From Mobula hypostoma (Eukaryota), in the NCBI RefSeq assembly GCF_963921235.1, contig NC_086103.1, positions 147,188,001-147,252,000 of the forward strand: a DNA stretch of 64,000 nucleotides, written 5' to 3'. A model generated the notes under the pieces. The model searched no databases. It was not told where the DNA came from and was given only the letters and a program-made list of their open reading frames with translations. Shown one piece after another: positions 3,270 to 55,554 of the stretch. Each line of letters opens with the position of its first letter. The first letter of the stretch is position 1. The position numbers were made by a program, and so were the translations under genes.

Positions 3270-3305
3270 AGTCGACGTTTCAGGCCGAGACCCTTCGTCA
3301 GGACT
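3270..3305 (-). ncRNA. Minimal type I hammerhead ribozyme, core intact
   Basis: Reverse complement reads AGTC-CTGACGA-AGG(GTCTCGG)CCT-GAAAC-GTC-GACT; stem I AGTC/GACT; palindromic ACGT stem III; predicted cut between 3274 and 3273. Confidence 0.82.
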
Positions 3306-3857
3306 AACTGAAGGAAGAGTGAGTAAGAGATTTGAAAGTTAGAGGGGGAGGGGGAGATACAAAATGATAGGAGAAGACAGGAGCGGGAGGGATAGAGCCA
3401 AGAGCTGGACAGGTGATAGGCAAAAGGGGATACGAGAGGATCATGGGACAGGAGGTCCGGGAAGAAAGATGGTGGGGGGGGGGAACCCAGAGGATGGGCA
3501 AGAGGTATATTCAGATGGACACGTTGATGGCATGTACATTGACTTCTCTAACTTCCGCTAAGGCCCCACCTCCCCCTCGTACCCCATCTGTTACTTATTT
3601 TTATGCACACATTCTTTCTCTCACTCTCCTTTTTCTCCCTCTGTCCCTCTGAATATACCTCTTGCCCATCCTCTGGGTCCCCCCCCCCGCTTATCTTTCT
3701 TCCCGGACCTCCTGTCCCATGATCCTCTCGTATCCCCTTTTGCCTATCACCTGTCCAGCTCTTGGCTCTATCGTTCCCCCTCCTGTCTTCTCCTATCATT
3801 TTGTATCTCCCCCTCCCCCTCCAACTTTCAAATCCCTTACTCACTCTTCCTTCAGTT

Positions 3858-3893
3858 AGTCCTAACGAAGGGTCTCGGCCTGAAACGTCAACT
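3858..3893 (+). ncRNA. Hammerhead ribozyme copy, core mutated (CTAACGA)
   Basis: agtc-ctaacga-agggtctcggcct-gaaac-gtc-aact. Confidence 0.6.
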
Positions 3894-4261
3894 GCACCTC
3901 TTCCTACAGATGCTGCCTGGCCTGCTGTGTTCACCAGCAACTTTGAGGAATGTCACCGAGTTTGGGGTGCAGGTTGAGATAGTTCCGAGGTGTGAAACAA
4001 AATCTTGCTTTTATATTGATGGATTCAAGCAATTTGCTGACAACTGATGACAATTCAAATAATTTATTGATCCTTATTTTTTTCACCTTTCACAGCAATT
4101 ATATTTTCTGCCTTCCAAATTGCTGGTGCTTCTGTATAATGTCAGGAATCCTGAATAATCAACAGTAGTGCACTCACAATCTCTGTAGCCTTCTACAACA
4201 CAGAGATACCCTGAATTTCTCTGGTATATTCTTGCTTGTGTTATTATTTACTTATTTTGAG

Positions 4262-4480
4262 ATACTGCGTGGAACAGGCCCTTCCGGCCCAATGAGCCAC
4301 ATCACCCAGTCACCCCTCCTATTTAACACTAGCCTAATCACAGAATAATTTATAATGGCCAATTCGCCAACTGATCCGTAGGAGGAAACTGGAATACCCG
4401 GAGGAAACCCATGCAGTTCATAGGGAGATCATACAAACTCCTTACAGACTGTGCCAGAATTGAACTCTGAACCCTGGAAC
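4262..4480 (-). mobile_element. V-domain SINE fragment
   Basis: Reverse complement of GAGTTTGTATG..CTCCC..TGGGTTTCCTCCGGG core; same family as the copy at 43880. Confidence 0.65.
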
Positions 4481-5837: not shown

Positions 5838-7045
5838 GTTCAAAGTTCAAAGTAAAATTTATTATCAGAGTGCATATATGTCACCACACACAATCCCGAG
5901 ATTCTTTTGCTGTGGGCATACTTAGCAAATCTATAGAACGGTAACTGTAAACAGGATTAATGAACAACAAACTGTGCAATGCAAATATAAATAAATAGCA
6001 ATAAAGAATGAGCATGAAATAACAAAATAAAGAGTCCTACATGTGAGACCATTGGTTGTGGGAACACCAGAAATAGAATGAGTGTAGTTAACATGAGGAA
6101 TTCTGCAGATGCTGGAAATACAAGCAACACACATCAAAGTTGCTGGTGAACACAGCAGGCCAGGCAGCATGTCTAGGACGAGTGGCCACACATTTTAATT
6201 CCACATCCCATTCCCATTCTGATATGTCTATACATGGCCTCCTCTACTGTAAAGATGAAGCCACACTCAGGTTGGAGGAACAACACCTTATATTCCGTCT
6301 GGGTAGCCTCCAACCTGATGGCATGAACACTGACTTCTCTAACTTCCGCTAATGCCCCACCTCCCCCTCGTACCCCATCCGTTATTTATTTATATACACA
6401 CATTCTTTCCCTCTCTCTCCTTTTTCTCCCTTTGTCCCTCTGACTATACGCCTTGTCCATCCTCTGGGTTCCCCCCCTCCCCCTTTTCCTTCTCTCTGTC
6501 CCATGATCCTCTCATATCCCTTTTGCCAATCAACTGTCCAGCTCTTGGATCTCCCTCTCCCCCTCCCACTTTTAAATCTCTTACTAGCTTTTCCTTCAGT
6601 TAGTCCTGACGATGAGTGTAGTTATCCTCTTTTGTTCAATAGCTTAATGGTTGAGGAGTAGTAACTGTTCTCGAACCTGGTGATGCGAGTCCTGAGATGC
6701 CTACACCTTCTACTTGATGGCAGCAGTGAGAAAAGAGCCTGGCCTGGCTGGTGAGAATCTTTGATGATGGATGCTGCCATCATCCAACATTTCATGTAGA
6801 TGTGTTCAATGGTTGAGAGGGTTTTACCCGTGATGTACTGGGTCGAATCTACTCCATTTAGTAGGGTTTATCACTCAAAGTCATTGGTGTTCCCATACCA
6901 GATGGTAATGCAGCAAGTCAGTACACTTTCCACCACACGTCTAGAGAAGTTTGCTAAGGTTTTTAATGACATGCTGAATCTCCGTAGACTCCTGAGGAAA
7001 TAGAGGTGCTGTTGTGCTTTCTTTGCAATTTTATTTATGTGATGG
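5838..7045 (-). mobile_element. Rex1/Babar-like LINE 3' fragment
   Basis: [16 protein letters not shown]...VESVLTCCITIWYGN; AATAAA and (TTTGAAC)n tail. Confidence 0.75.
6091..6611. mobile_element. Penelope-like insertion with a short inverted terminus
   Basis: Inverted pLTR end 6091-6180, then forward GIY-YIG C-terminus RLEEQHLIFRLGSLQPDGMNTDFSNFR*; stops inside the ribozyme core (AGTCCTGACG); 13-bp TSD ATGAGTGTAGTTA at 6078-6090 and 6612-6624. Confidence 0.88.
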
Positions 7046-7329
7046 TAAAGCAATAGATGTTGTCTACATGGATTTTAGCAAGGCATTTGGCAAGGTTTCT
7101 CACTGTAAGCTCGTCCTGAAGAATAAGATGCAAGATCCACAGTGACTTGACTGGATTCAAAATTGTCTTGCCCGTAGAAAACAGAGGATATTGGTTAATG
7201 TGATTTACTCAGGGTGGAAGTCTGTGACTAGTGGTGTTCCAATGTAATCCAAACTGGGACCACTGCTGTTTGAGATATATTCAAATAATTTGGATAAAAA
7301 TGTGAATGGTTAGGTTTGGAAGTTCTTGG

Positions 7330-14188: not shown

Positions 14189-17100
14189 GTAGGAGCGGCG
14201 TTTGCTCGGTCTGGTTTGGATGTCTGCAGGGCAGTAGCAAGTCATTTGGAAAGAGTAGAAAAGCATGCAGAACATTACTCAGCGGGCTTCCTGTCATCGG
14301 CAGCACGGGAAGGGAAGAGAAGTCATGAATTGAGCCAGCGATTGGGCAGTAAACCTCTGGGGAGGTACTTTTTTTTGTACAATGGAAATAAACAAAAAGT
14401 AGCAGGTAGGTGAAGCAAATAGTTAAGAGAAATGACATTGATCTTTATAGAAAAGGGGTTGTTGTTTGGAAATAAGGAAGCATTGTTATATTTGTAGTGG
14501 ATGTTCGTGAGGTTACACCTGAACAACTACTTGCCGTCCCCTTATATAAGAAGGCATAAAGTAGGACTGGAAGAAGTAACCTGATGAATTCCTGGCAAAA
14601 GTGGCATATTCTACCGAGAAAGACTAAAGACGTTGGCTGTGCATTCTTTGGCGCTCAGTAGAATGAGACTGATCTAATTAAAACCTGCAGAATTCCAAGG
14701 GGTTACAGTAGCATTGACATAAATTCTGGCACAGGAGAAGTTGAGGTCTGGAGTAGATCAGTCATTATATGGAAAGCTTGAGTTAGCTTGAGGGCCTGGT
14801 GGAAGATAGAATAGAAGTTACTAAACAGACAAATGAATGGAGAACAAAAGAATGACCTCATAAGCTTTGACTATTACAGAGTGGAACTGGGAATTGCCTT
14901 GATGGAGAGTTGTGCTTAGGGGATTTGAGGCTCTGAAGCCTGAGCCTGGGGTGGTCCAGGGTAGAATAAATGGGTAAGAAATGTCTGCTGGAAAAATTGT
15001 GCCCCTCTGGTATAGTGGTGAGACTGTGCAAAAGCTAGTCAGGGGATAAAGTGGTAGACAGCGAGAACAAGTTCAATAAATCAGGATAGCCAAGGGTGCA
15101 ATAAAGGCAAAGGAAGGAATACTCATTAAACTGAACTAATCTTAATGCACAAGGAATAACAGTTAAGGCGGGCAAATTCAGAGCATGGATTGGCCCTAAG
15201 GACTAGGATGTTATCGCCATCGACAAAAACATGCTTGAGAAACGAGCAGGACTGGCAGCTCACTGTTCCAGGATCCACATGATGTGCATGTGACAAAATG
15301 AACTTAATCTTTAATGGATGCCACAGGCATGACAGAGGTACAAGAAAGGGGAAGCTGTTACATTCTCCCGTTTTCCATAAGAGAGAATGTAACAGCACTG
15401 TTTAGAGACGACATTCTTGGGGGATCGTCCAGTGAGTTCATATGGTTAGAACTTGGTATAAGGGGTCACGCTATTGGGTAATTGAATCCCCTTTCCATCC
15501 CTCCCAAAAAAAGTCAGTAGGGATTTGAGTGAGTGTTTTTAGAATAATATGGCTATATTTGTGGGAGATTTTATTTTCCCCAATATTAACTGTACTACTT
15601 AGACGAGTATTAAGATTCTGGACAGGCTGGAATTTGTGAAATATGTCTAACAAAGTTTCCTGAGTCAATACACAGGGGTCCTATTTGGAAGGGTGCAATT
15701 CTAGACCTTGGGGAATGAGGCAGGGCAAGAATCTGAAGTGGCAAGCAAAGCCGAGGTTATTGTTACTGAAATGTGTTGTGGCGGCAGTACAGGCATAACA
15801 AATTACTCTCAAGTTAGAATGAAAATAATGAATAGGGCAAAAGAGGAATAGTGAGGCAGTGTTCATGGGTTCGTTCATGGCCCGTCAGAGTTCTGCCAGA
15901 GGATAAGAAGCTATTCCTAAAATGTTGAATATGGGTCTTCAGGCTCTAGTACCCACCCCCTGTTAGTGGTAATGAGAAGAGGGCATGACCCTGATAGTGA
16001 GTGCCATTAATGATGGATGCTGCCTCCTTGGGGCACCCCTTAATGTGCTCGACGTCGGAGAGGCTTGCGTCTGTGATGGAAATGGCTGAGTCTGCATGGC
16101 TCTGAGATCCTGGCACCTCTGTACGAGATGGTGATGCAACCGGTCAGAATGCTCTCCGTTGTACATCTATAGAAATTTGCTTAATTTGGTGATGCGCCAA
16201 ATCTCCTTAAGCTCCGAGTGAAGTATAGACACTGGCTGCTTTTGTCATGATTGCATCAATATGTTGGGCCAAGGATAGATCCTCTGAGGTTGACACCTAG
16301 GAACTTGAAACTGCTCACCCTTTCAGTCACTGTCTCCTCAACGAGGATTGGTGTTTGTTCTCCCAAATTCCCCTCCCTGAAGTTCAGGACTGATTGTGGA
16401 CTTCAGGAACTGGAAATTGGGTGAGCCTGTTTGAAAGGAAAAGAAATACAAGCAGGATTCTTTCAAGTGTAATATCAAGAGTCCACAAGTAGCATGCTTC
16501 CGTTAAGGTGAAGGCTAAATCTGGCAAGTTTACAGAACTTTCGTTCGTGAGGAAAGATGTGGTTAAGTTGGTAAGTTCAGAAAAAGATTGAGGATGATGT
16601 CAGGCCTAGAGGGCTTGAGTTATAGGGAGAGGTTGGCCAGGTTAGGTCTTTATTCCTTGGAACGTAGATTGAAGGCTGATCTTGTAGAAATGTTTAAACT
16701 ATGAACTGTGTAGATAAGGTGGATGGTTAAGTATTTTCCCTGTGGTAGGGGAGTCCAACACTTGGGGCCAGGTTTTATGTTGAGGGGGTAAATATTTAAA
16801 ATACCTGAGGGGCAACTTTTTCATGTGGGGAGTGATCTGCATATAGAATAATCTGCAAGAGGAAGTGGTCAAGGCAAATGCAACAGTAGCATTAAAGGAT
16901 AGGTACATACAGGGATGGTGCTTAGAGGGATATGGGCCAACTCCAGGAAATTGGATCCAGCTGGGTGGGCCCAGTGGTTAGCATATATTGGTAGGGTTGA
17001 GGAGCCTGTATCCGTACTATATTGCTCTATAGCTCTAAAATACAAACTTCGATCTTGGTTTTTTCCAGTCCTGATGAAGGGTTTTGGCCCAAAACGTCGA

Positions 17101-20100
17101 CTGTACTTTTTTCCATAGATGCTGCCTGGCCTGCTGAGTTCTTCCAGCATTTTCTGTACGTTGCTTGAATCTTCAGCATCTGCGGATTTTCTCTTGTTTT
17201 TGATCTTGGTTTAACTGGGGGCATTTCTAGCTCAATCATAACAAAAGATAAGAGTGACAAGACAGGCTTAGAAATGGCCATGAGGAATGATGGTAAAATA
17301 GTGGTAGGTTGGTTTGGTGAACCTGTTGCAATTTTAGTTCTGCTGTGTAGCATACAATTACAAAGTACATAACTCTTAGGAGAAAGAGTTGGCCATTTGA
17401 CCCTTTGAATTTGCTCCAGCATTGAGCAAATTCATGGCTGATCCTCTACCTCAATTTCTTTCTCTTATATTAACTTTACCATTCCCGTTTGAAAGAAGTC
17501 GGTGACTAGGTATTCATATCTCCCTCAGTAAAGAATGGGTCATTGAATGAAGAAATATCTCACTTCATCCTGGATGCCATCTGACACACTGCCTTTAGGA
17601 TTTAGATATCTCAGCTGGAACAAGCCTCCTTGCATTGGCCCTTTTGAAATTTATAAGTTTCAGTGATGTTGCTCCTGTTCTCGAGAGAAGAGGCTAGCCT
17701 GCGCAGTCTTGCCTCAAACAGAAAAATCTGCCATCATAGGAAACAGTCCAAATCTTTCTTATACTCTTGATGGTAAATATATTGTTTTGAACTTAAGAAG
17801 TCCAATCAGTATTCTAAGTGTGATCTTGTCAAGGCCCAATATAATTGCTGCAACATCTTTGTTCTTGTACTCAAATCTAGCAGTAAAGGCCATGACACCG
17901 TCTATGTTCAGAATCAGGTTTATTATCACCAGCATGTGACATGAAATTTGTTAACTTAGCAGCAGCAGTTCAATGCAATGCATAATACAGTCGGCCCTCC
18001 TTATCTGCGGGGGATTGGTTCCGGGACCCCCCGCAGACAGCAAAAAATGAGGATGCTCAATTCCCTTATTTAACCTGTCTCATTGCGGGTGGACTTTCCG
18101 TGGTGTTTCTGTTCCGTTGACGGAAAACGATCACGATTGAAAATAAAGTGGAAATAATAAAGCGATCGGAAAGAGGTGAAATGCCATCGGTCATTGGAAA
18201 AGCGTTAGGCTACTGTCGGTCAACGATCGGAACAATTTTAAAGAATAATGGAGCATGTGAAAGGCCCTACCCTGATGAAAGTTACAATTATTACTAAGCA
18301 ACACAGTGGTTTAATTATTGAAATACATGCGTTTCTTAAGCGTTTTGTATGAATAGAAAGGTAAAATATATATTATATATTAAGACAAATGTTTGACTAA
18401 CTGACGCTAAATAATACCGGATGTACCTGTTCCGACTTGTGTACAAANNNNNNNNNNNNNNNNNNNNNNNNNNNNNNNNNNNNNNNNNNNNNNNNNNNNN
18501 NNNNNNNNNNNNNNNNNNNNNNNNNNNNNNNNNNNNNNNNNNNNNNNNNNNNNNNNNNNNNNNNNNNNNNNNNNNNNNNNNNNNNNNNNNNNNNNNNGCT
18601 AGAGAGAGAACTTCCGGTTTTCCCGGTCCGCGGTTGGTTGAATCTGCGCATGTAGAACCCGCGGATAAGGAGGGCCGACTGTAGAAAAAAATAAATGAAA
18701 TAAAATAATAATTAAGTAAATCATTTACAGTATATGTATATTGAATAGATTAAAAACATGCAAAAACAAATACTGTATATTTTTAAAAAGTGAGGTAGTG
18801 TCCAAGGGTTCAATGTCCATTTAGGAATCGGATGGCAGAGGGGAAGAAGCTGTTGCGCTGAGTGAGTGCGCCTTCAGGCTTCTGTACCTACTACCTGATG
18901 GTAACAGTGAGACAAGGGCATGCCCTGGATGCTGGGGTCCTTAATAATGGACGCTGCCTTTCTGAGACACTGCTCCCTGAAGATGTCCTGGATACTTTGT
19001 AGGCTTGTACCCAAGATGGAGCTGACTAGATTTACAACCCTCTGCAGCTGCTTTTGGTCCTCAATAGCTCCCTCATTCAGAGAGTGATGCAGCCTGTCAG
19101 AATGCTCTCCACGGTACATCTATAGAAGTTTTTGAGTGTATTTGTTGACATGTCAAATCTCTTCAAACTCCTAATGAAGTATAGCCACTGACTTGCCTTC
19201 TTTATAACCACGTCAATATGTTGGAACCTGGTTAGATCCTCAGAGAGATCTTAACACCCAGGAACTTGAAACTACTCACTCACTCCACTTCTGATCCCTC
19301 TATAAGGATTGGTATGTGTTCCTTCGTCTTACCCTTTCTGAAGTCCACAATCAGCTCTTTCATCTTACTGACGTTGAGTGCCAGGTTGTTGCTGCGACAC
19401 CACACCACTAGTTGGCATATTTCACTCCTGTACGGCCTCTCATCACCACCTGAGATTCTACCAACAACGGATGTATCGTCAGCAAATTTATAGATGGTAT
19501 TTGAGTTATGCCTAGCCACACAGTCATGTGTATAGAGAGAGTAGAGCAGTGGGCTAAGCACACACCCCTGAGGTGCACCTGCGTTGACGAGGAGGATATG
19601 TTATCACCAATCTGCACAGATTGTGGTCTTCTGGTTAGGAAGTCGAGGATCCAATTGCAGAGGAAGGTACAGAGGCCCAGGTTCTGCAACTCCTAATTCC
19701 TTTCTGCACGTACACATTAACTTTCAGTGTGTACAAAGGCATTTAATTCCCTTCTAAAGTAATTTTCCAACCTGTCACTAATATATGGTTTACTTTTCTA
19801 TTGTGCATTGAAGTGCACACTCGCATCATACTTCCTCTGTCATACTTTTGTTTGCTCAATTAGCTTTTCTATATCTCCATGAAGCCTCTCTATAGCCTCA
19901 TTACTTGAGATCTACCTAGTATGTACAATCAGAAAAATTGAAAATATGACACTTGGTCTCTGTAAAATTGTGATGAGCTGGACTGAGGAACTGTCGCCCC
20001 ACTGGTCACAGCTTTCCAACATGGGAAGGATGAATTTGTTCTCATTCAAGAGAAAATCTGCAGGTGCTGGAAAACCAGGCAATGCACGCAAAATGCTGGA

Positions 20101-23100
20101 GGAACTCATCGGGCCAGGCAGGATCTATGGAGTGTAAACAGTTGATGTTTTGGGCTGAGAACCTTCATCAGAACTGGGGAAAAGACAAGAAGTCAGAGTA
20201 AGATGGTGGTTGAGGGGGGAGGGGAGGACGATATACAAGGAAGTAGGTGATGGGTGATGTGTGGGGGGGGTGAAGTAAAGAGCTGGGAAGTCGATTGGTG
20301 AGAGATACAGGGCTGGAGAACGGGAATCTGGTAGGAAAGGATAGAAAACCATGGAGGAAAGGGAAAGGGGAGGAGCAACAGAGGGACGTGATGGGCAGGT
20401 AAGGAGTTAAAGTGAGAGAGGGAAATGGGAATGGTGAGTGTTGTGGGGATTACCAAAAATTTGAGAAATCGATGTTCATGCCATCAGATTGGAGGTCACC
20501 CAGATGGAATACAAGGTGTTGCTCCTCCAACCTGAGTGTGTCCTCATCGTGGCAGTAGAGGAGGCTGTGGACTTGCATATGGGAAGTGGAATTAAAACAG
20601 TGGCCACTGGGAGATCCTGCTTTTTCTGGCAGACGAAGCGTCGGTGCTTGGCGAAGTGGTCTCCCAATTTACGCCGGGTCCCACTGATATACAAGAAGCC
20701 GCACCGGGAGCACTGGATACAGTAGACGACCCCCCAACAGACTTGCAGGTGAAGTGTCGCCTCTCCTGGAAAGAGTGCTTGGGGCTCTGAATGGTAGTGA
20801 GGGAGGAGGTGTCAGAGGAGTTCCAGCACTTGTTCCGCTTGCAAGGATAAGTGCCAGGAGGGGAGATCAGTGGGAGGGACAAATGGACAAGGGAGTCGTG
20901 TAGGGAGCGATCCTGCTGGAAAGTGGAGGAGAGGGAAAGATGTGCTTGGTGTGGGATCCAATTGGAGATGGCGGAAGTTACAAAGGACTATGTGCCGGAC
21001 ATGGAGGCTGATGGGGTGGTAAGTGAAGACAAGATTTTTCTTTTAAGTCTTTTGACTTGACTTTTTCCTTTCGTAATCTTATTCTGACTCAATCCTGTTA
21101 TTCATTTTTTTGTTGGTATACAATTAATAAATTCCTTGGATTACAACATATCCCTTCTTCCTAATGTTAGAATAACATGTTAGTTCTTTCTTAAATCGCA
21201 AGTCACATTTTCTATCCTCAGATCTTCAGAAACCATTATAGAATTGATAAAATTTTCTGAGTTCTTTCAAAATTCTGTAATATAGATAACATGTCCTTGG
21301 ACTTAATTAGGTTCCATTCTCACTAATGACTCTAATAAACATTTTAATTCTAATTTTCTTCAGTCCCTTAAATTCTTCAACACTGCATCTCTTTGTAGAG
21401 AAGTTGCATTAGATTAAACATTCAATTACTCTAGGACTAGAAAATTGCATTTTTTTTTGGTCAATCGTGGAGTAAACGTTAGGAAAATGTGTAGGAACAT
21501 GTAATGGGGATTAAGATATGACCAACTGCATTAAATAGTAAAGCAGGCTCAAAAAACCATGGCATTTCCCTGCTATTTCTTATGTCAGTACTTCTGAATA
21601 GCAGGTGAAAATTGTTAAAATATAGTGACTTAGAAGTCACTAATAATCCTCTTTGAGATGATCCTTAGATGAAAGAGTGATGAACTGTTTTGGCAGGAGA
21701 CACCAAGCCTTGAGCAGGATTGGGTAAAGAATGATTAGACCAATTGAATGTCATTATCTTCAAATATAAACTTGAGGGATCTTTGGCAGTTATATAATTG
21801 AGGGCTGCAGAAACAACAAGAATGGAAGAATAGGTGTTTTGCTGAAGATGAAGTTAGGGGGTGAAAGTAACTGAACAAAAAAAAGTCAGATTAAACAATT
21901 GAGAATTTGAAAGAGGGCTGTTGTATGTGAAGAATTCTCCAGGTAAAGCTTTTTTGACTTTATTGCCTGGGGATTGAAAACGGAGCTGGTAATGTCATAA
22001 AACAATGATCCTGATGCTTTTTTTTTCTCTCTCCTCCCCCCCCCAAAGAAACCATTTGCTTGTGAATATGAAGGTTGTAATAAAAGCTATTCTAGAAAAG
22101 GTCATCTTGCAAGGCACATTCTGATTCATAAAGGAGAAAAACCATTCAGGTCAGTGTATGTGTTAAGGTAATTTCTATTGTGGTATTCTTTAAAGTTGTA
22201 AAAGAAAAGTATTAAAGATTTGATATTATAACTTCTGTTAAATGTATACAAACCCTTGCCCAGAAGTTTGTTACAGGACTTGGAGTAGAAGATGTTCTCT
22301 GTGTTCTTGACTGTGTCTTGTTGGTTTCCTGCACTATTGCCCTAAGCTTGTCAAAATGCATAGTTTTGTAGCATCTTGATATTGCAAACACCACTACAAC
22401 TTTAAAAAAAGGACAACAGATATTTTTCAATAAATGTTAAATTCTTAGTCTGAATATGGGCAAGTTATCAAGTCTGATTTGAGCAATCAATACAGATCTG
22501 ACCGATTCAGGTTTCCTAAAACTTCTGCTTTATTTCTACATACAATGGATTCCAGTTAATTGGGCCACTTTGGGTCCAGTACATTTTGGCCCAATTAATT
22601 AGCCAAAATTTCATGGAAATGGGTAAAAGGTTAAAAAAGGACTACTGTTACTGTTTAACTGAGTAACAGTTTGTGTATTTAAATGAAATACAGAACAAAA
22701 TAGAACACTACCAATACTTCTACAGTGCTTTCAAACTGGCCATTGGTTCCTAATAGTTATTGATGGAGGTATTCATCAGCTGTGTTCTTTTAATTGAGTG
22801 CAAATGAGTAAAATCAGCAGAGACACCTAGTGCAGATAATGGACTGCCTTCATACAATATTTTAGACAATTGCATCTTCTAAACCTTCATTTTCATTGTA
22901 ACAGCCAAGATGATTGTCTATACTTTCATAATTCGTAACGTTGAAGTAATGAAATCATTTCATTTTCACTCCTGTCCGTTTCTGGTATCTACAAGGCTGA
23001 ATCCTTGAAACTGTGGTCAGTGAAACAGATCTGAATTGTCTTGCTGCTTATTTCTAGCCAATGATTAATACAAACAAATGCAACTGACACTATTTTAAAA

Positions 23101-41184: not shown

Positions 41185-42010
41185 ATAAACATGAGATTCT
41201 GCACATGCTGGAAATCCAAAGCAACAGTCAAGATGCTGAAGGAACTCAACTCAGGCAATTTCTATGGAGGGGAATAAGCAGTAAACATTTTGGGCAGAGA
41301 CCCTTCATCAGGACTAGAAAGGAAGATGGAAGAAGGCAGCATCAGTTGGGAGTGGGGCATCAGTACAAGCTAGCAGGGGATAGGTGAAACCAGGTGAGGG
41401 GGAATGTGATAGGTGAAAGGTAAGGAGCCGAAGAAGGAACCTGATAGTGTGGACCATGGGACAAAGGGTGGGGGGGGGGGAGAAGGGGGAGATCACCACA
41501 GGAAAGTGATGGGCAGGTGAGAATAGGGAAGCCAGAAATTGGAACGGAAAAGGGGCTTCTTTGAGCATCTTAACCTTCTGGCACAAAAGGCAGAATTTCC
41601 TGGTGGCCACCCGTTTTATTTATTCTTTGTTTCTGACATGTTGGTCCATGGCTGTATCAAACTGCCATAATGAGGCAACTCAGACTGGGGGAGTAACACC
41701 TCATATTCTGTCTGGGTAGCCTCCAAACTGATGGCATGAACACTGATTTCTCCAACTTCTGGTAACTTCTCGCCCCTCACCCTTCTCTTCACCTAACACT
41801 TCCCAGCTTCTCTGTTCATCCATCCACTGTCCCTCTTGCCTAGTTTTACTTTCACCTGCCAGCTTTTCCTCCTCACTCCCCTCACCACCTTATTCTAGCT
41901 TCTTCCCTTTTCCTGCCCTGTCGTAATGAAGGGTCTCGGCTCAAAACTGCTTATTCCCCTTCATAGACGCTGCCATATCTTCTGAGTTCCTCCAGTACTT
42001 TGTGTGTTGA
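41185..42010. mobile_element. Older Penelope-like fold-back insertion
   Basis: Inverted pLTR, then forward GIY-YIG end, then pLTR; decayed hammerheads at ~41281-41315 (-) and ~41920-41950 (+); approximate TSD CTTTCTG(A/G)AAG at 41173-41183 and 42013-42023. Confidence 0.75.
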
Positions 42011-43053
42011 ATCTTTCTGGAAGTACTGTGTTTACATCAGTTTTGTTTTTCTCCACTTGTTCCTCACAGGTGGCTCAATTCCCAAATTTTGTGCTCCATC
42101 AACACAATGCAAGATGACAATTCTCCCCACTGTCTAATTTCACTAATTACAATATTAAAATTTGTTTTCCCCAGAAAGCATTATTTGCAAAATTAAAATT
42201 CTTTAACACCATTCAACATCCAGATATATTGTTGAGGCACAAATCTCAAAATCATTACCTTCATTAGAGGCTCATTGCAGTTTGCCATCTACAAGCACTG
42301 GTTGAACCCAAAGATCTGTAGTTCACATGATACAGCCAAAGGCAATAATTAGAGTTCATAACTAATTTACCTATTCTGTTTACCTTTTTGGAAGAAAGCA
42401 TTTAGAATCAGAGTTACACTTAAGCTGATTCTCTTATTTTCTGTAATCCGCACAATGTTTCTGACCTTCCCTGCCCTTGTAGATTCATTGCATTTTGGAG
42501 TATACCCAATTCAGGGTTCATTGAAGTTGGGTTGATGCTTCTCACCAGCACTATTAAAAGATGATTCTTCAAGCAATTCACAGGATTTTAGTTATATCTT
42601 CTCTTTAATAGTTGAAGCATGTGCTTTATGGCAAAATGAAGTATAATTCTGGCATTGTACTACACTATAACCAAACTGAGCTTAGCTTATTCAACACTTT
42701 GGATTTCCCGATTTTGATCATGGCCTCAATTTTTCTTCTAGTTTTTGATTTGTTCAATCCTGAATAGATTGCTGTATCCTAAAAGAAGTCAAAGTAGCTT
42801 TACACTTGATGGTAATATTCTTCTGAGCACTGAGTATCTAGAGATTCTCAGCAGTGGGTATTACAGTTAGAAGATCGGATCTTCTAACTAGGCGCACACT
42901 GGATCTCATTTAGCACCTTATTTAGTTATTGAGAATACTTTTGCTGCTGGTTTTACCCATCTCATATCTTGGTATTCAATCAAAACCCCTTGTATTTTAA
43001 TTTTCCCAGAGTTCAGCTTTTTGTTGAGAGTTAGCACATCAAAAGATACATTT

Positions 43054-43209
43054 GTCGACCTTTCGGGCCGGAACCCTTCGTCAGTCCTGACGAAGAGTTC
43101 CAGCCTGAAACGTCGACAGATCTTTTCCACGGATGCTGCCCGACTTGCTGAGCTCCTCCAGCATGTTGTGAGTATTGCTTTGACCCCAGCATCTGCAGAT
43201 TATTTTGAG
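43054..43209. mobile_element. 156-bp Penelope-like mini-insertion: back-to-back hammerheads plus pLTR terminus
   Basis: 15-bp TSD TCAAAAGATACATTT at 43039-43053 and 43210-43224. Confidence 0.88.
43084..43117 (+). ncRNA. Minimal hammerhead ribozyme, core nucleotides intact, stem II weakened
   Basis: GTC-CTGACGA-agagttccagcct-GAAAC-GTC-GAC; predicted cut after 43114. Confidence 0.7.
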
Positions 43210-43879
43210 TCAAAAGATACATTTTTAAGGAGAGAAACAACTTATGCCACTACTTTCAAAACTTTTGATATAAGGGGGATTACTTGCTACCTGCTTTCAA
43301 TGTTCACTTTGATGTAATGGACATTAAAAAGGCTGATAGCAGTAGCCAAATTTGCCTGCTTCTACTTGTACCATTCCCTCAGTAAATGGCTGGGTATGCA
43401 CCAGTGTGTGATAGAGTCAAAACACCTTAAGTTTGTATCTAGCCCCAATCTACACTAATCTGGTTTTAGTTTTCCCAGAACTCTGGCTTGGACCACTCAC
43501 CAACCCATCAGAGGACACTTAAAGTAGCCAATTAATATACTAGTCTGTATGTTAAATCCATCCAATCACAAGGAGAACATAAACTCTACACAGTAGCAGA
43601 GGTGAGGATTGAAACTACGTTGCTGTAGTTGGGAGACACCAACTACTAGCGAGCTACTGTGCTGGCATTAGTCTGGGGAGCACAAAAGGCCTTTTTCCAT
43701 GTCACTAAAGCCTATGACACAGAAAGCACTGTAACACTTCTCACATTTGCTTGCCTGCAAAAGTTTATCACCATAATGTTTGCTACACGGTGGCATGCAA
43801 GCAATGACAAACCACAATTGATCCAATCTCATTGCAGATACCCGCAGTTTTACAATTTGTTTCCAACAAGTTTCCCAAA

Positions 43880-45428: not shown

Positions 45429-45576
45429 TTGCGAGAGAAAATCTGCAGATGCTGTAAATCCAAGCAACACACACAATATGCTGGAGACCAGTCTTGCCCG
45501 AAACGTCGACTGCACTTTTTTCCACAGATGCTGCCTGGCCTGCTGAGTTACTCCGGTATTTTGTGTGTTTTGCAGG
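45429..45576. mobile_element. Penelope-like mini fold-back insertion next to the MTIF3 promoter
   Basis: Inverted pLTR end, then a forward piece starting in ribozyme stem II (GCCCGAAACGTCGACTG); 12-bp TSD GAGTCCAACATT at 45417-45428 and 45577-45588. Confidence 0.82.
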
Positions 45577-45674
45577 GAGTCCAACATTAGTGGGTTACTC
45601 AACTACATTGCAAATTACTGACACAAACCACAGCTCCAGTGGTGGAAGAAGTGTATTTGTGGTAGTAGATCTGG

Positions 45675-46521: not shown

Positions 46522-47913
46522 TGTAATATTGATGTGACTCGGACACTGTTGTAGATTGAACAACCACGTTTATTCACCAGACTTCCATTTTTTACTTCTC
46601 TATGTCCTGACGTCATACGCACTCTGACACTACGAATACTCACACAATACATTACATCCCCCTTCTCAAGTTTTTTTTACAACTCTGTGAATTACCAAAA
46701 CAATGTCTCTAGGTATGCCCTTCTTACAGTGCAACAACCACGACATAAACTAAAAAAAATCTTACCTTCTTGTACTGTATTCTGCATTGTATCTTACAAT
46801 ATTAACAGCAGTATATTTTCTTTTACTAACATAGACTAATAAACTGTTTATTTCACACCTGGAACTTATAATGTGTGAGTTTGCCACCAACTGTGTGAGA
46901 CTGTATGTATGTCTGGTCTCTGTATCTAGCTGGAAGTTTGACTTGTCTCCCAGACCGTGTGTGACACAACTGTGACTGTGCTTGTCCTTCATCCCTGTCA
47001 GTCTCTCGAGTGACCTCTGTGTCTTTGCGGTCTGCATCACTCTTGGTGTCATTTGTTTCCATATCTGTATATGTGGACATGTCCTGTGCATCTGTACCTG
47101 GAAACTCACTCTTGCCTGTCTTCAGCAGATGCTTCCTGTTCCTCCTGTAGACTCTTCCATCCGGCGTGCGAACTATGAAGGATCTTGGTTGCTGATGTCT
47201 GTTCACAACCACAGCTGGTTGCCAAGTGTCCCCTCTCTGTATTCTGACATTTTCAACTGTATGCAGATCTGGCAACTACTGTATGTCTGTCATAGTGGCT
47301 GTTTTGCTATATTTGCTTGTACTTTTGCTTGTCATGTACTTGAGCATTACCTCCAGGAATCAGTAGAGTTGTGGATGTTGGCAGTTTGGACCTCAGACGA
47401 CGTCCCATCAACAGCTGCGCAGGAGAGAACCCCACACCCTCAATCGGTGCGTTGCGGTATTCGAGCAGAGCAATGTAAGGGTCACCGTTGCTGCTTTGTG
47501 CCTTCTTGAGCATGTTCTTGACAGTTTGTACAGTTCTCTCTGCTTGTCCATTAGACTGAGCGTGTCCTGGACTGGAAGTAACATGTTGAAATTCCCAGCT
47601 TTCTGAGAATCCTCTGAACTCACCACTGGCATATTGTGGACCATTGTCACTAATGACAATATCTGGAATACTATGTCTTACGAATGTTGACTTCATTGCG
47701 GTAATGACACTACGACTGGATGTGTCACTTAACTTGGTGATCTCCGGATATTGATATCCCACTTCTGACACCATGTAATATTGATGTGACTTGGACACCG
47801 ATGTAGATTGAACAACCATGTTTATTCAACAGACTTACATTTTTTATTTCTCTATGTCCTGACGTCATACGCACTCTGACGCTACGAATACTCACACAAT
47901 ACTGTACATTACA
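46522..47913 (-). mobile_element. Internally deleted Ty3/Gypsy LTR retrotransposon (integrase only)
   Basis: LTRs 47774-47913 and 46522-46656 (TGTAAT...ATTACA); PBS TGGTGTCAGAAGTGGGAT (tRNA-Leu 3' end); PPT GAGAAGGGGGA; integrase core ISDNGPQY...QSNGQAERTVQTVK...SPAQLLMGRRLR. Confidence 0.92.
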
Positions 47914-49125: not shown

Positions 49126-49279
49126 TCATTAAGGAGGTGAATCACTTTGCAGAATACAGAATTCTCAGTGCTAGCCAGAGTGATATGGCTTCTCCATTTA
49201 AATTTCAGGTCAGTGGTTGCCAGCCCCATGAGATCTTGATCTTGGCTTTGCTGATGTTAATGCCATTGAGTTTTGAGGG

Positions 49280-49419
49280 AACGCAAACACGAGGAAATCT
49301 GCAGATGCTTAAATTTCAAGCAACACACATAAAAGTTGCTGGTGAACGCAGCACGCTAGGCAGCATCTATAGCAAGAGGTACAGTTGACGTTTTGGGCCG
49401 AGACCCTTCGTCAGTCCTG
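49280..49419 (-). mobile_element. Penelope-like pLTR terminus ending at the hammerhead (49382-49414, G12>A)
   Basis: Same terminus as 3172; ends in TTCGTCAGTCCTG. Confidence 0.8.
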
Positions 49420-49550
49420 GGGAAGACTAGTCTAAGGACTAGGGAAGTCTAGGGAAGACAACCTCTGACCCCGCCAAACTTTAGAGACTGAGGGGCACTG
49501 GACCCCACCCCAAACCTCGGTTTGTGTGGATGCTGTATCATTTGCTACCC

Positions 49551-51383: not shown

Positions 51384-51499
51384 TTATAATTAATGAATAA
51401 AAAGCATACAAGACTGATTAGGCAAGAATAATTACTGAAAGTGGAGAGAAAGGAAACTAGTTTGTGCACTCATAGAAATAAGCATATTTATTGTGTTGG

Positions 51500-53462
51500 A
51501 CATACTCGTCTCAGCAGCCAGTGTAGATGTACTATTGTGGATTTATCAGCAAATGTGTGGATTATTGTCTACCAAGAGGACTGTATGGCTGTTCCCAGAC
51601 TGATCCAGGAGATCTACTCCCTTCTGAGCTCTAGGATTGCAATGTTCAAATCAAGTGATACTGACTTTGTAAAAGAAATTGAGATACAACCTCTAAAACT
51701 ATCGGAGATGACAAGAAACAATCAACTCCCAGACCAGCCATCAGTTGTGACAGAGCTTACATATGAAAATGTCGGACAGCATTGCTGACAACAGCGCATC
51801 CCTTTCCAATGACCTTGATGCATTTTAAGCATGTTTGAAACAGAAGGGGATTGGTATGTCATCCTGCCATCTTCCAATGGAACTGAACCCGCAGTCACCA
51901 TTGCAGATGTAAGATCAGTCTTCCAGAGGGTGTACCCATGGAAGCAAGTGGCATGGATGGCACCATTGGCCATGTCCTCAGAACCTATGCAGGTCAATTG
52001 GCAGGTGTATTTGTAGACATTTATAACCTCTCCTTGCTTCACTCTGACACTCCTACCGGTTTTAAGGAGACCACTATCATCCTGGTAGCTAAGAAAAACA
52101 AGAAAACATGCCTTGATGACTACTGCCCAGTGGTTCTGACATCTACCAGCATAAAATGCTTTGAGAGGTTGAGCATGGCACGCATTAACTCCAGCCTCCC
52201 AGACAACCTTGACCCACTGCAATTTGCTTTCTGCTGAAATAGGTCCACAGTAGATGCCACCCCCCAGCCATACACTCATTTTTGGAGAGTCTGGACAGTA
52301 AAGACACCTATGTTAAACTATTGTTTATTAACTACAGCTCAGCCTTCAGTAATATAATTCCAAGCAAACTCATCACCAAACTCCAACACCTTCCTCTGCA
52401 ACCTGGATCTTGATTTCCTGACCAACAGACCACAATCAGTAAGAATAGACAGCATACCTCCACCTCAATTATTTTCAACATTAGTGCTCTACGGGGTTGT
52501 GTCCTCAGCTGCCACACTACTCACTACCTGTACTCTCATGACTATGTGGTCAGAGACTGCTCTAACTCCATCTACAAGTTAGATGATACCACTCTAGTGG
52601 GCTGTATCACAAATACAGTGAAATGGAGCACAGGAAGGAAATAGAGAGCTTAGTGACATGGTGTCATGACAACAACCTTTTTCTCGGTATCAGCAAACTA
52701 AAAGAGATGCTCGCTGACTTCAGGAAGAATGCTAGTGTACAGTACCTGCTGAGGTTGAGAGAGTTAAAAGTTTCAAGTGGCTAGGAGTGAACATTACTAA
52801 TCGTCTGTCTTGGTCCAGCCAAGAGATGCTTTAGCTAAGAAAGCTCACCAAAGCCTCTTTCCTCAGAAGACTAAAGAAATTTAGCATGCTCCCATCGACC
52901 CATACCAATATATATTGATGCACCTTAGAAAGCCTCCTATTTGGATGTATACCTGCTTAATATGACAACCGTTGTGCCTGTGACCAGAAGAAACTGCAGA
53001 GAAATGTGGACATAGCTCAACACATCACTGAAACCCACCTCCACTCTGTGGACTCTGCTTATACGTCCTGGTTCCTTCGTGAAGCAGCCAGCATAATCCT
53101 GGACCACACCAACCATGGACATTCTCTCCTCCCCCACGAGTCAGAAGATACAAGATCCTGAAAACATGTACCATCAGGCACAAGGAAAGCTTCTATCCTG
53201 CTATTTAAGCCTATTGAATAGTTCCCTAGTATGATAAGGTGGACTCCAAACCTTGCAGTTTTCCTTATTATGATCTTACACTTGACTCTCTACCTGCACT
53301 GCACTTTTTCAGTAGCTGTTGCATGATATTTTGCATTATTTTATTTTATTGTTTTACCTCGTACTACCTCAAGGCACTATGTAGTGATTGGATCTGTAAG
53401 AATAGTATGCAAGACAAGCTGTGTACCTCAGTACATGTGACATTAATAAACCAATTCTAATT
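51500..53462 (+). mobile_element. Rex1/Babar-like LINE, decayed
   Basis: QLAGVF.DIYNLSL...CLDDYCPV.LTS..IKCFERL...LDPLQFA; AATAAA tail. Confidence 0.8.
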
Positions 53463-55417
53463 CGAATTTTTGAATTTAATATGGGAGCTTGCTTCTATGT
53501 ATGAGTGTCCATAACTGAGTGTCTGTAACCCAGGGATGGCCTGTAATTTCAAGGCATATACTACTGTTTTTTTTAAATTCCAGTTTTTCTTTTAATTACT
53601 TGAATTTAAATTCTCCAGCAGCCAACATGAGATTCCAAATTGTATCTGTGAATTAGCAGCCCAGGACTCTGGCTGTTAGTCCTGTAACTTAAGAGCTACT
53701 GTATTTTATTGTACTTCATAAATCATTTGAAAATGGATTGATGACAGCTCTCGGAAACCTGCAGAAATAGACCCAAATGCATTGTCAATCTGTAATGTGT
53801 TACCGGACAAGACATTGGCGTATTTGAAGGTTGTAGAAGTGGTCAGATCCAGAGATAATTTTCAGTGAAGTCCCGGAGTTGACAATGTGCATTGTTCCTC
53901 TGGATAACATTATGTAATTGCACAGCTGGATGCACAGGAGGATCATAACTTTTGGGGCAACTCACAGAAGGAGAAGAATGAGGAGGATACTGAATGTTGG
54001 AAGGGTGAAATTTAGAAAGCTTAAGGTTGAAATTTAGAAAGATTAAGGATGATCCAAATGTAAACTTTCAGGATATTTTGAGGAATGGAGAGCAGATATA
54101 CAGAAGTCCTTATATTGGATTAAGCCTTGCAGTCCTTCCAGGAATGAAGTTCGGCAATAGTTCTTCATGAAGAAGATGCTAAGAATTTGGAAATCTCTAA
54201 ATCAAACAACAGTTAGTGCTGGGTCAATAGTTAATTTATAAATTGATGTTGATAAACTTTTGACAATGAAAGATATTATGACTTGTGCAGCTACATCTAC
54301 TCTGGTCAGCTACATCCACATTGTCATTGAAGTCATGATATGAGTTCTAATATCTAATCAGATTTATTCTAATGTGACTAAATATAACAAAATTACATTA
54401 AGAAATTTTATGGTCCAACTTGTTTGGCCGATTTGTTTATTGTTCTCAAGAGATTATCTGTTGCAATTTTTCCTTTTTATCTTCAAAAGTGTTTATTACT
54501 TTCCTGAAGTACTTGACAGTAATGGTAACTTAATTATTACAACAGCCCTAAAATGACATCTGTTTTCCTTTCCTAATAGTATATTAAAGGAGTGTATGCA
54601 AATCCTTTTCCAATATTTCAATTAGTTTTCAGAGCACATTCTTCAAGAGAGCCATAAAGATTATAATATCATTCCCTTTTCCCCTATCATTACCACCATA
54701 GCTTCAAAACCTTCATACATTATGATTAAAAATGCTTTGCACTGTGGAAAACACTTTATGATTAGTATATTGTGGCTGTTCTTAGAAGCTACAGATAATA
54801 TGACATGTTGGCCTTCATCTCACAGGAAGCACCATTTAGGCCATGTTTTCATGCTGATTGAGAATTATTATACACACAGTGATATCTTTGAACAAGTAAT
54901 TTTCCTATTACCAGAGTACAGCTGTAGCCCTTCCTGGCATAATGCCATGGTTGATTTTGATTGCTACTAAAATTCTGATATGTCTGGCCACCAGATTAGT
55001 TTGCAAGTGCATTAATGTTAACGCTGACAATAAAATCATTTTGTCTCTCTGTATATTCACAACAGTCATTTATACAATGGGCATGCAATATGAGGAAATT
55101 GTTAACAGGACACATTATTATTCAACAATTTGTGAAGGTATACTGAATATAAAAGAAAAGTGAAGTCATCTGTTACTTGGCAATCTTGCTCGCTCTTTGG
55201 CAGTTGCTGTACTATAAATAGATTAGTCCTAAAATGTCCCTTTGTCCCTTGCATATGAACAGAGACGTTTTTAATGTCCCCCTTATGTTGGGTAGCAAGC
55301 CTCTCAGTGGGAGAACAGTTAGGGCCACATCTCCTTAAGTTTAAAGATAGCTATAGTTAAGGATAAATATGAAGCTTGCAAGAGAGTATTAAATTGGAGC
55401 AGGACAAATTACAAGAG

Positions 55418-55554
55418 TCACAAACAAGAGAAAGTCTGCAGATGCTGGAAATCTAAGCAACACATGCAAAATGCTGGAGGAACTCAGCAAGCCAGGCAGC
55501 AGCTATGGAAAAAAGTACAGTCAACATTTGGGCCAAAACCTTTCGGCAGGACTG
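55418..55554 (-). mobile_element. Penelope-like pLTR terminus ending at hammerhead stem I (decayed)
   Basis: pLTR terminus...cagtcaacatttgggccaaaacctttcggcaggact. Confidence 0.75.

What the first reader, a model, noticed from the sequence alone, without database searches (positions are those of the whole stretch)
3270..55554. Dispersed family of minimal hammerhead ribozymes (about 14 copies or remnants in 64 kb)
Seen: a recurring 36-nt motif AGTC-CTGAYGA-AGGG(N5-6)GCCY-GAAAC-GTC-GACT at 3270(-), 3858(+), 6602(+, truncated), 17066(+), 20139(-), 27017(-), 34085(+), 41281(-), 41920(+), 43054(-), 43084(+), 45496(+, partial), 49382(-) and 55517(-), always within a Penelope-like pLTR. Established: CUGANGA/GAAA/NUH is the hammerhead core, and Penelope-like elements carry minimal type I hammerheads whose palindromic stem III (here ACGU) favours cleavage as a dimer. 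Inference: this genome holds a very large number of such ribozymes, spread mostly by short non-coding derivatives. The 3270 copy has a complete core and stems.
Basis: partly seen in the sequence, partly recalled or inferred. Interest (0 to 1): 0.8.

Follow-up and report, generated by a model that had tools for sequence, protein, structure and literature searches.

The report
Penelope-element minimal hammerhead ribozyme copies
These repeats are the tail ends of Penelope-like jumping genes, each carrying a small "hammerhead" self-cutting RNA motif of a kind described in 2014; this ray genome holds about 100,000 of them, but only one of the 14 copies in this window is still intact.

Summary
All 14 listed sites carry the motif AGTC-CTGAYGA-A-GGGTCTCGGCCY-GAAA-CG-TC|GACT or a remnant of it, within 1 nt of the given coordinates. 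Chance expects none.

It is the published minimal type I hammerhead of Penelope-like elements (PLEs; Cervera & de la Peña 2014). [quoted passage not shown] One locus shows the repeat-ORF-repeat layout.

Exact pattern counts give 89,725 intact cores (control 209).

In the window only 3270(-) is fully intact. 43083(+) keeps its core but has weakened stems. The rest are truncated or mutated, mostly by CpG decay (GCCCGAAAC to GCCCAAAAC, which removes G12).

Copies are 5'-truncated 3' ends, often head-to-head pairs flanked by one target-site duplication.

I found no covariation (stems do not vary between lineages), no Rfam match and no usable RNA reads. Cleavage is therefore inferred from the literature.

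"Spread by short derivatives" is only partly supported: short copies dominate, but they look like insertion by-products.

Other first-stage notes of this scan flagged the same motif on other pieces of this genome. It is a known kind of element, and what stands out here is its abundance.

The parts
3270..3305 (-). Only fully intact minimal hammerhead in the window. Helix I is AGUC/GACU. Core is CUGACGA, followed by an unpaired A. Helix II is GGGU-CUCG-GCCU. Then GAAA and the palindrome ACGU, with C17. The predicted cut lies between 3274 and 3273.
3172..3945 (.). One insertion made of two head-to-head 5'-truncated PLE 3' ends: arm 3172-3521(-) with the long tail and arm 3525-3945(+) with the short tail. 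The inverted repeat is 3210-3521 / 3642-3953, 95% complementary. A 14-bp target-site duplication, AGGAATGTCACCGA, flanks it at 3158-3171 and 3946-3959. The second hammerhead at 3858-3893(+) is dead (G5>A).
2..987 (+). Old PLE remnant (ORF 3' part and 3' UTR, 66% identical to the reference copy). It ends before its hammerhead.
6084..6617 (.). Rearranged PLE 3' end: a tail-only piece at 6084-6182(-) abuts the ORF end and 3' UTR at 6181-6617(+). The hammerhead there starts at 6602 and is cut off after about 14 nt.
17062..17201 (+). Solo 140-nt hammerhead+tail module of an older subfamily, flanked by an 11-bp target-site duplication GATCTTGGTTT (17051-17061 / 17202-17212). Its 5' end lies 5 nt before helix I. 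The hammerhead at 17067-17102 is dead (G12>A by CpG decay).
20047..21033 (-). Old PLE copy (69% identical to the reference) with ORF 3' end, 3' UTR, decayed hammerhead 20140-20175 and tail.
26957..27205 (-). 5'-truncated young copy with an 8-bp duplication ATAGAGCC on both sides. The hammerhead at 27017-27052 keeps its core, but GUC has become GCC and 11.1 is A.
34085..34125 (+). Hammerhead remnant (C3>U, truncated after GAAAU) preceded by a pyrimidine tract and CAG.
41188..42062 (.). Old head-to-head pair: arm 41188-41491(-) with decayed hammerhead 41280-41315, and arm 41582-42062(+) with a broken hammerhead at about 41920.
43054..43209 (.). 156-bp back-to-back unit. A 35-nt reverse-complement hammerhead (43053-43088, -) is fused at helix I to hammerhead+tail (43083-43199, +). 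A 15-bp target-site duplication TCAAAAGATACATTT flanks it (43039-43053 / 43210-43224). The + copy keeps core, GUC and ACGU, but helix II has a mismatch.
45436..45587 (.). Head-to-head pair of very short arms: tail-only 45436-45487(-) and 45491-45587(+). The + arm begins inside helix II, so it has no CUGAUGA box.
49287..49418 (-). Solo hammerhead+tail module. The helix I 5' strand reads AGGA instead of AGUC, and G12>A.
55424..55553 (-). Solo hammerhead+tail module of an older subfamily, with the core broken (A6>C, G12 lost).

Best explanation
The motif is the minimal type I hammerhead ribozyme carried in the terminal repeat (pLTR) of Penelope-like retrotransposons.

Anatomy, shown here. In this ray's elements it sits about 300 nt after the RT/GIY-YIG open frame and about 70-100 nt before the element's 3' end. 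The window holds no working element. It holds 3' end fragments left by target-primed reverse transcription: 5'-truncated solos and head-to-head pairs made in single insertion events. After insertion they decay neutrally, fastest at the motif's four CpGs.

How the ribozyme would work, inferred from published work on this class. One motif cannot close helix III. When two sense copies meet, their palindromic ACGU stretches pair into one four-base-pair helix III, and the helix I strands pair crosswise. The two copies may lie on one tandem repeat-ORF-repeat transcript or on two separate RNAs. This gives a double hammerhead in which each core cuts after GUC. The reaction is slow on its own and is probably helped by the element's protein. 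It would trim the element RNA out of longer transcripts.
For: Motif presence and non-randomness. Genome counts: 70,992 (control 0) and 89,725 (control 209) for two descriptors, and 139,153 for the 5' half alone.

Link to PLEs:
- 27,350 GIY-YIG candidates in the genome.
- L025 and L026 have open frames of 871 and 785 aa with RVT_1 and GIY-YIG. The Atlas neighbours are animal RT/GIY-YIG clusters at 0.98.
- The identical hammerhead lies 299-304 nt downstream of those frames.
- L027 has the direct repeat-ORF-repeat layout.
- L025 has an inverted 705-nt 3' end upstream.
- There are two 3' end classes about 30 nt apart, the published optional PLE 'tail' (PMC11167929).
- Target-site duplications flank the pairs and the solos.

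Published diagnostic traits, all present: an extra nucleotide between 9 and 10.1, the G10.1 pair, palindromic 15.2-16.2, and opposite-strand pairs (PMC4209133; dimer model reviewed in PMC6765202).

Constraint: between PLE lineages that are about 30% diverged, the hammerhead is 75-86% identical and the tail 63-87%, against 57-59% for the adjacent 3' UTR. In the L033/L043 lineage the core and stems are unchanged while the helix II loop differs.
Against: - No cleavage evidence for this sequence. Only assembled contigs of public runs were available, and these cannot show RNA ends.
- No Rfam hammerhead model matches, even at E<=10. This is expected for a motif without helix III, but it means there is no independent model-based support.
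- No covariation: observed values equal the shuffled ones.
- Nearest-neighbour energies favour other folds. The double-hammerhead fold scores -12.9 kcal/mol against -32.7 for the best dimer, and the monomer prefers GACG/CGUC pairing.
- The most successful subfamily has U, not the conserved C, at 11.1.
- In the one PLE tested biochemically, ribozyme mutants still inserted, and no RNA-seq reads ended at the cut site (PMC11167929).
- Most genomic copies are solos or inverted pairs, which cannot supply a sense partner in cis.
Confidence: 0.88

Rival explanations
1. The short hammerhead+tail units (about 135-145 nt) and the back-to-back units are self-propagating non-autonomous elements, SINE- or retrozyme-like, mobilised in trans by the PLE enzyme. 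On this reading they, rather than full-length PLEs, account for most of the copies.
For: - Ten of 20 randomly sampled intact-core loci have their 5' boundary within about 19 nt of the core.
- Exact-count ladder: only 35% of cores keep the canonical 12 nt upstream, and there is almost no further loss over the next 6 nt.
- A TSD-flanked 140-nt solo starts 5 nt before helix I.
- Short modules are enriched for one tail haplotype, found in 5 of 11 short loci against about 4 of 30 long loci.
- A conserved YYAG (initiator-like) sits at the module's 5' edge in all subfamilies. D. virilis Penelope is reported to have an internal promoter (PMC2377424).
Against: - That haplotype also occurs in a full-length copy with a 785-aa frame (L026) and in 0.9-2.7-kb copies.
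- Fold-back junctions are highly diverse, about 30 different ones among 50 listed loci. They therefore arose independently and were not copied from a master.
- 5' ends also fall inside the tail and at all distances upstream.
- No tandem direct arrays occur in the window, and direct pairs are rare (2 against 8 head-to-head pairs among 100 hits).
- The count ladder is confounded by other subfamilies and by a C/T polymorphism at its first base.
Confidence: 0.2
2. The motif descends from a hammerhead, but in this lineage it is kept for another job in the element's 3' end or terminal repeat. Candidates are enzyme recognition, a start site for transcription, or a fold-back point for the inverted repeat. 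Self-cleavage would then be vestigial.
For: - U at 11.1 in the dominant, highly successful subfamily.
- Unfavourable predicted energetics for the catalytic fold.
- Fold-back junctions concentrate at the near-palindromic GTC-CT-GAC at helix I and the core: 3,257 loci at spacing 0-30, against 1,017 at 31-60 and 600 at 61-90.
- Published low in-vitro activity, and insertion that does not depend on the ribozyme in vitro (PMC4209133; PMC11167929).
Against: - Every catalytic nucleotide and both stems are unchanged between PLE lineages about 30% apart, while the helix II loop varies. That pattern is what selection on a working hammerhead predicts.
- The same architecture cleaves as dimers or with protein in other PLEs (PMC6765202; PMC11167929).
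Confidence: 0.15
3. The matches are chance resemblances to a short, degenerate consensus inside an unrelated repeat.
For: The hammerhead core is short, and no curated model matches.
Against: - Reversed-pattern controls give 0 to 224 hits against 71,000 to 139,000.
- The motif has all the extra traits of the published class.
- It is physically linked to RT/GIY-YIG open frames.
Confidence: 0.01

Closest known systems
Minimal hammerheads (min-HHRs) of metazoan Penelope-like elements (Cervera & de la Peña 2014, PMC4209133; dimer cleavage: Lünse, Weinberg & Breaker, cited in PMC6765202)
   Same: Type I topology and no helix III loop, with palindromic 15.2-16.2. An unpaired nucleotide lies between A9 and 10.1, and helix I is short (4-5 bp). 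The motif sits in the PLE terminal repeat. Many solo copies occur, as do opposite-strand pairs 100-700 bp apart. It is reported in fishes, coelacanth, Xenopus and reptiles.
   Different: Copy number is about ten times the published maxima: about 90,000 intact cores against about 9,000 in Xenopus and 4,000 in coelacanth, although the descriptors are not identical. Sequence variability is very low, with one dominant sequence, unlike the 'extreme variability' described for most metazoans. The dominant subfamily has U at 11.1. Helix II is 4 bp with a tetraloop, not the 6-8 bp noted for Schistosoma and Drosophila.
PAc, the Poseidon PLE of Anolis carolinensis (PMC11167929)
   Same: An RT + GIY-YIG element. 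It has the optional 30-40-nt 'tail', explained by two reverse-transcription start sites a few tens of nt downstream of the hammerhead. The enzyme primes on both DNA strands, which fits head-to-head copies.
   Different: In PAc the open frame starts inside the hammerhead. Here the hammerhead lies about 300 nt after the stop codon and about 600 nt before the next frame. PAc was tested biochemically, and this element was not.
Non-LTR retrozymes of animals (PMC7229834; bioRxiv 10.64898/2026.07.22.740005)
   Same: Type I hammerheads related to PLE terminal repeats. Non-coding, abundant, and absent from birds and mammals.
   Different: Retrozymes are direct tandem repeats of 170-400 nt that give circular RNAs. 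Here there are no tandem arrays, and copies are solos or inverted pairs.
Canonical type I hammerhead (Rfam Hammerhead_1)
   Same: The same catalytic core and cleavage triplet.
   Different: No helix III hairpin and no loop-loop tertiary contacts. The Rfam model does not detect it.

Membership tests
Hammerhead ribozyme (minimal type I, PLE class) | Core boxes C3-U4-G5-A6-N7-G8-A9 and G12-A13-A14 | tested here: met
   Present in 3270(-), 27017(-), 43053(-) and 43083(+). Broken in the other ten copies.
Hammerhead ribozyme (minimal type I, PLE class) | A15.1/U16.1 and cleavage triplet NUH (GUC) | tested here: met
   GAAA-CG-UC in 3270(-) and 43083(+). 27017(-) has GCC instead.
Hammerhead ribozyme (minimal type I, PLE class) | Helices I and II flank the core in type I order | tested here: met
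   AGUC/GACU, plus a U.G pair. Helix II is GGGU/GCCY with a CUCG loop.
Hammerhead ribozyme (minimal type I, PLE class) | No helix III loop; palindromic 15.2-16.2 that allows a dimer | tested here: met
   ACGU occurs in the intact copies and in 89,725 genome matches to ...GAAACGTC.
Hammerhead ribozyme (minimal type I, PLE class) | Unpaired nucleotide between A9 and 10.1, and a G10.1-C11.1 pair | tested here: inconclusive
   The extra A is nearly invariant. G10.1 pairs with C in older and minor subfamilies, but with U (G.U) in the dominant one.
Hammerhead ribozyme (minimal type I, PLE class) | Compensatory changes in the stems | tested here: inconclusive
   39 distinct copies were compared: observed values equal the shuffled ones, with one pair changed on both sides in 2 copies. 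The stems do not vary between lineages, so the test says nothing either way.
Hammerhead ribozyme (minimal type I, PLE class) | Match to a curated covariance model | tested here: not met
   No Rfam hit at gathering score or at E<=10. The models require helix III, so a miss is expected for this class.
Hammerhead ribozyme (minimal type I, PLE class) | Site-specific self-cleavage | not testable with these tools
   Only contigs of public runs were available, and they show no read ends.
Penelope-like element | Single open frame with reverse transcriptase followed by a GIY-YIG endonuclease | tested here: met
   L025 (871 aa) and L026 (785 aa): GIY-YIG is above the Pfam cut-off and RVT_1 is below it. 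Nearest Atlas clusters are animal HTH/DUF8422/RVT_1/GIY-YIG proteins at 0.98. No such frame lies in the window itself.
Penelope-like element | Terminal repeats (pLTR), direct or inverted, formed by partial copies | tested here: met
   Direct in L027 (3,458-nt unit). Inverted in L025, L002, L040 and at window 3172-3945.
Penelope-like element | Optional 30-40-nt 3' 'tail' | tested here: met
   3' ends fall into two classes, at reference positions about 3771-3797 and about 3801-3830. In pairs, the two arms usually differ in class.
Penelope-like element | Hammerhead in the terminal repeat | tested here: met
Non-LTR retrozyme | Head-to-tail tandem repeats, each unit with a hammerhead | tested here: not met
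   No tandem array contains the motif in the window. Among 100 genome hits there are 2 direct pairs against 8 head-to-head pairs within 1 kb.

The most novel reading that the evidence does not exclude
The hammerhead plus tail behaves as a discrete module of about 140 nt, and the 5' edge of helix I is a preferred end point of PLE copies and of fold-back junctions. A conserved pyrimidine tract and YYAG sit at exactly that edge in every subfamily. This element resembles both a transcription initiator and a 3' splice site.

That would mean PLE template RNAs start at the ribozyme, consistent with a start site inside the terminal repeat. Snap-back of the cDNA at this end would then build the head-to-head repeats. 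If so, the ribozyme's position is tied to how the element's characteristic inverted architecture is made.
Probability: 0.3. Interest if true: 0.5.

Novelty: new member of a known kind. Interest (0 to 1): 0.25.

Why it matters
This is a clean, very large natural collection of one minimal hammerhead sequence. There are about 90,000 intact cores, plus their decayed relatives, in a cartilaginous fish.

The collection could serve three purposes. It is a neutral-decay data set for the ribozyme. It allows a test of whether a G.U closing pair in helix II is tolerated. It is material for asking what PLE hammerheads are for, which is still open: published work shows weak activity, help from the element's protein, and insertion that does not need the ribozyme in vitro.

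For annotation, these sites should be labelled as PLE 3' ends, not as genes or independent ribozyme loci. The finding does not add a new kind of ribozyme or element.

Tried and rejected
- Rfam, at gathering score and at E<=10: no hammerhead hit. The eight weak hits to other families are chance.
- My first fixed-spacing pattern found nothing because I had the spacing wrong. This was corrected.
- A fuzzy regex scan timed out.
- Pfam on the ten longest window frames: no PLE protein in the window. The only hits were an IF3_N exon and an integrase remnant.
- Covariation on 39 distinct copies: none, and uninformative.
- A relaxed descriptor over all fetched loci found only this one hammerhead lineage. 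No second PLE family was available for comparison.
- RNA evidence: the listed runs are Logan contigs guessed to be RNA. Laying them showed the family in four coded organisms but no molecule ends. The depth step and the loose ends at 3305 are confounded by other subfamilies that share only hammerhead+tail, so I do not count them as evidence.
- Thermodynamic folding does not favour the catalytic fold. It neither supports nor excludes catalysis.
- The count ladder for 5' ends cannot separate truncation from subfamily differences.
- Short-versus-long haplotype comparison: suggestive, but the sample is small and the haplotype also occurs in full-length copies.
- Literature search for the exact sequence found only unrelated primers. 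The supplements of the 2014 paper and the Lünse et al. paper are not held.
- No complex or structure prediction was needed.

Full report
OBSERVATION

Reading the 14 listed places on the stated strands shows the same 36-nt motif or a piece of it. Aligned with flanks, the copies share the motif plus about 100 nt downstream (alignment A1). Some coordinates are off by one base.

The intact form at 3270-3305(-) reads AGUC CUGACGA A GGGU CUCG GCCU GAAA CG UC | GACU. The 36-mer with up to 3 mismatches occurs 3 times against 0.00 expected. The looser CTGANGA-N8-20-GAAAC occurs 3 times against 0.44 expected.

The two assembly gaps (18448-18597, 24190-24366) lie more than 1.2 kb from any copy. Nothing in the finding depends on sequence across them.

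STATE OF THE COPIES

- Only 3270(-) has every core nucleotide, GUC, the ACGU palindrome and both stems.
- 43083(+) keeps core, GUC and ACGU, but has a mismatch in helix II and a 3-bp helix I.
- 27017(-) keeps the boxes, but GUC has become GCC.
- 43053(-) has lost the palindrome and its helix I strand.
- The other ten are truncated or carry core mutations.

The commonest lesion is GCCCGAAAC to GCCCAAAAC. This is a CpG transition that destroys G12. The motif has four CpGs, so it decays fast once inserted.

WHAT CARRIES THE MOTIF

All-against-all comparison shows that different copies share a unit that begins at the hammerhead and runs about 135 nt downstream. Younger copies also share 200-600 nt upstream.

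The window has no PLE protein among its long open frames. I therefore searched the whole assembly, a 3.48-Gb genome that earlier notes of this scan call a ray. The window lies on contig C21.

A 372-nt arm finds more than 2,256 candidates, and the best 40 are 95-98% identical. A GIY-YIG profile finds 27,350 candidates.

Around the longest open frames:
- L025 has an 871-aa frame and L026 a 785-aa frame. Both have reverse-transcriptase and GIY-YIG domains. Their nearest Atlas clusters are animal RT/GIY-YIG proteins.
- Each frame is followed 299-304 nt after the stop by the identical hammerhead.
- L027 shows two hammerheads in the same orientation 3,458 nt apart, flanking the frame. This is the classical repeat-ORF-repeat layout.
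- L025 has an inverted 705-nt copy of its own 3' end upstream.

Copies end at one of two 3' positions about 30 nt apart. This matches the optional 30-40-nt PLE 'tail', which has been explained by two reverse-transcription start sites in the Anolis element (PMC11167929).

In the window, a single target-site duplication flanks each of these: the head-to-head pair 3172-3945, the 156-bp back-to-back unit 43054-43209, and the solo 17062-17201. Each is therefore one insertion event.

Two window copies still adjoin ORF remnants (20047-21033 and 6181-6617), and a third ORF remnant lies at 2-987.

NUMBERS

Exact pattern counts over the genome, with the reversed pattern as control:

| Pattern | Count | Control |
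|---|---|---|
| CCTGAYGAAGGG-N4-7-GCCYGAAACGTC | 70,992 | 0 |
| CTGANGA-N10-16-GAAACGTC | 89,725 | 209 |
| CTGAYGAAGGGTC | 139,153 | 224 |

The published counts for this class were about 9,000 in Xenopus and 4,000 in coelacanth, obtained with another descriptor (PMC4209133).

Contigs of public runs from four coded organisms hold the family. The only common variants inside the motif are N7 C/U, 11.1 U/C (20-30% C) and CpG transitions.

COMPARISON WITH WHAT IS KNOWN

Cervera & de la Peña (2014) described minimal hammerheads in both flanking repeats of metazoan PLEs. Their description includes:
- no helix III, with palindromic 15.2-16.2;
- a nucleotide between 9 and 10.1;
- a conserved G10.1-C11.1 pair;
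- a short helix I;
- many solo copies;
- pairs on opposite strands 100-700 bp apart;
- very low activity in vitro, and only as dimers.

The review PMC6765202 summarises the dimer model and cites the experimental paper by Lünse et al., which is not held in the library. In the Anolis element the hammerhead needs the element's protein to cleave and is not needed for insertion in vitro.

Every architectural trait is present here. The differences are of degree:
- far higher copy number;
- one dominant sequence instead of high variability;
- U at 11.1 in the dominant subfamily;
- a position about 300 nt after the frame rather than overlapping its start.

TESTS OF THE RIBOZYME READING

Rfam finds nothing. 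This is expected for a motif without helix III.

Covariation across 39 distinct copies equals the shuffled control.

What can be said is this. Between PLE lineages about 30% apart, the hammerhead (75-86% identity) and the tail (63-87%) are better kept than the adjoining 3' UTR (57-59%), despite the CpG load. In the L033/L043 lineage the core and stems are identical and only the helix II loop differs.

Nearest-neighbour folding prefers non-catalytic folds: -12.9 kcal/mol for the double hammerhead against -32.7 for the best dimer. This fits the weak activity in the literature but proves nothing.

No raw RNA reads were available. Identity with the known class is therefore well supported. Catalysis by this particular sequence is inferred.

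HOW THE COPIES AROSE

I sampled twenty loci evenly from the first 100 intact-core hits.
- Ten have their 5' boundary within about 19 nt of the core. Six of these are back-to-back inverted pairs.
- The other ten are truncated between 38 nt and more than 1.4 kb upstream.

Genome-wide, head-to-head pairs with exact helix II anchors number 3,257 loci at spacing 0-30 nt, 1,017 at 31-60 and 600 at 61-90. The junctions are diverse. Many are near-perfect palindromes with a 2-4-nt centre, the signature of fold-back (snap-back) synthesis or of two converging cDNAs.

A ladder of exact counts shows where upstream sequence is lost:

| Pattern | Count |
|---|---|
| core (CTGAYGAAGGGTC) | 139,153 |
| +AGTC | 100,755 |
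| +T | 78,218 |
| +CTTCAGT | 48,742 |
| +CTCTTC | 43,491 |

The losses are concentrated in the 12 nt before the core. However, other subfamilies and a C/T polymorphism at the first base of the 48,742 pattern contribute to them.

In a tail-anchored sample, 5' ends are also frequent inside the tail. The picture is therefore of a class of very short copies whose upper limit is the hammerhead's 5' edge, plus a broad class of longer truncations.

Short modules are enriched for one tail haplotype. That haplotype also occurs in a full-length copy.

I conclude that short, non-coding copies do dominate numerically. The evidence that they propagate on their own is weak. By-products of PLE insertion explain the data at least as well.

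VERDICT

The kind of element is already known, and this is a new and unusually abundant member in a ray.

Other first-stage notes of this scan (s1-142661, s1-142676, s1-143428) reported the same motif on other pieces of this genome. Note s1-143145 reported the 156-bp unit in this window.

Noticed in passing
window 3306-3330(-), 17045-17066(+), 20176-20200(-), 34062-34086(+), 41316-41340(-); also L033 and L043 just upstream of the hammerhead: In every subfamily a pyrimidine-rich tract ending in YAG lies immediately 5' of helix I (for example cttccttcAGttAGUCC, ttttttccAGUCC, cttttccccAGUUC). It resembles both a 3' splice site and an initiator (YYAGTCC). In D. virilis Penelope the 3' end of an intron maps to the 5' end of helix I (PMC4209133). 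I could not test splicing or transcription start here.
   Followed up: partly
genome-wide; window 43054-43209; L031, L036, L038, L046, L050: There are thousands of head-to-head hammerhead pairs whose junction lies at helix I or the core: 3,257 loci with 30 nt or less between helix II anchors. Junctions are diverse and often near-palindromic. In most of the tightest pairs only one of the two cores is complete. The two arms usually have different 3' ends (long tail against short tail).
   Followed up: partly
L002:831-1188: Three tandem copies of a 121-nt piece of the PLE open frame sit at the centre of a 616-nt inverted-repeat pair of PLE 3' ends.
   Followed up: no
G000 contig ends (for example C11:106099, C21:15276, C75:4014, C130:559225-575070, C46:621487-632374): The best GIY-YIG matches cluster near contig ends and in closely spaced arrays about 5 kb apart. 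This suggests tandem PLE arrays in subtelomeric or unplaced sequence.
   Followed up: no
window 39998-40669(-): An open frame with a strong IF3_N domain match (E 1.9e-19). It is probably an exon of the mitochondrial translation initiation factor 3 gene, so several PLE fragments may lie in or near this host gene.
   Followed up: no
window 47307-47819(-): An open frame with an integrase core domain (rve, E 3.3e-9). It is a remnant of an unrelated integrase-bearing element.
   Followed up: no
window 3282 and genome-wide: The dominant subfamily has U at hammerhead position 11.1 (GCCU). Older and minor subfamilies have C (GCCC), seen in 20-30% of contig depth in four runs. The change is the C-side transition of the CpG whose G-side transition kills G12.
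   Followed up: partly
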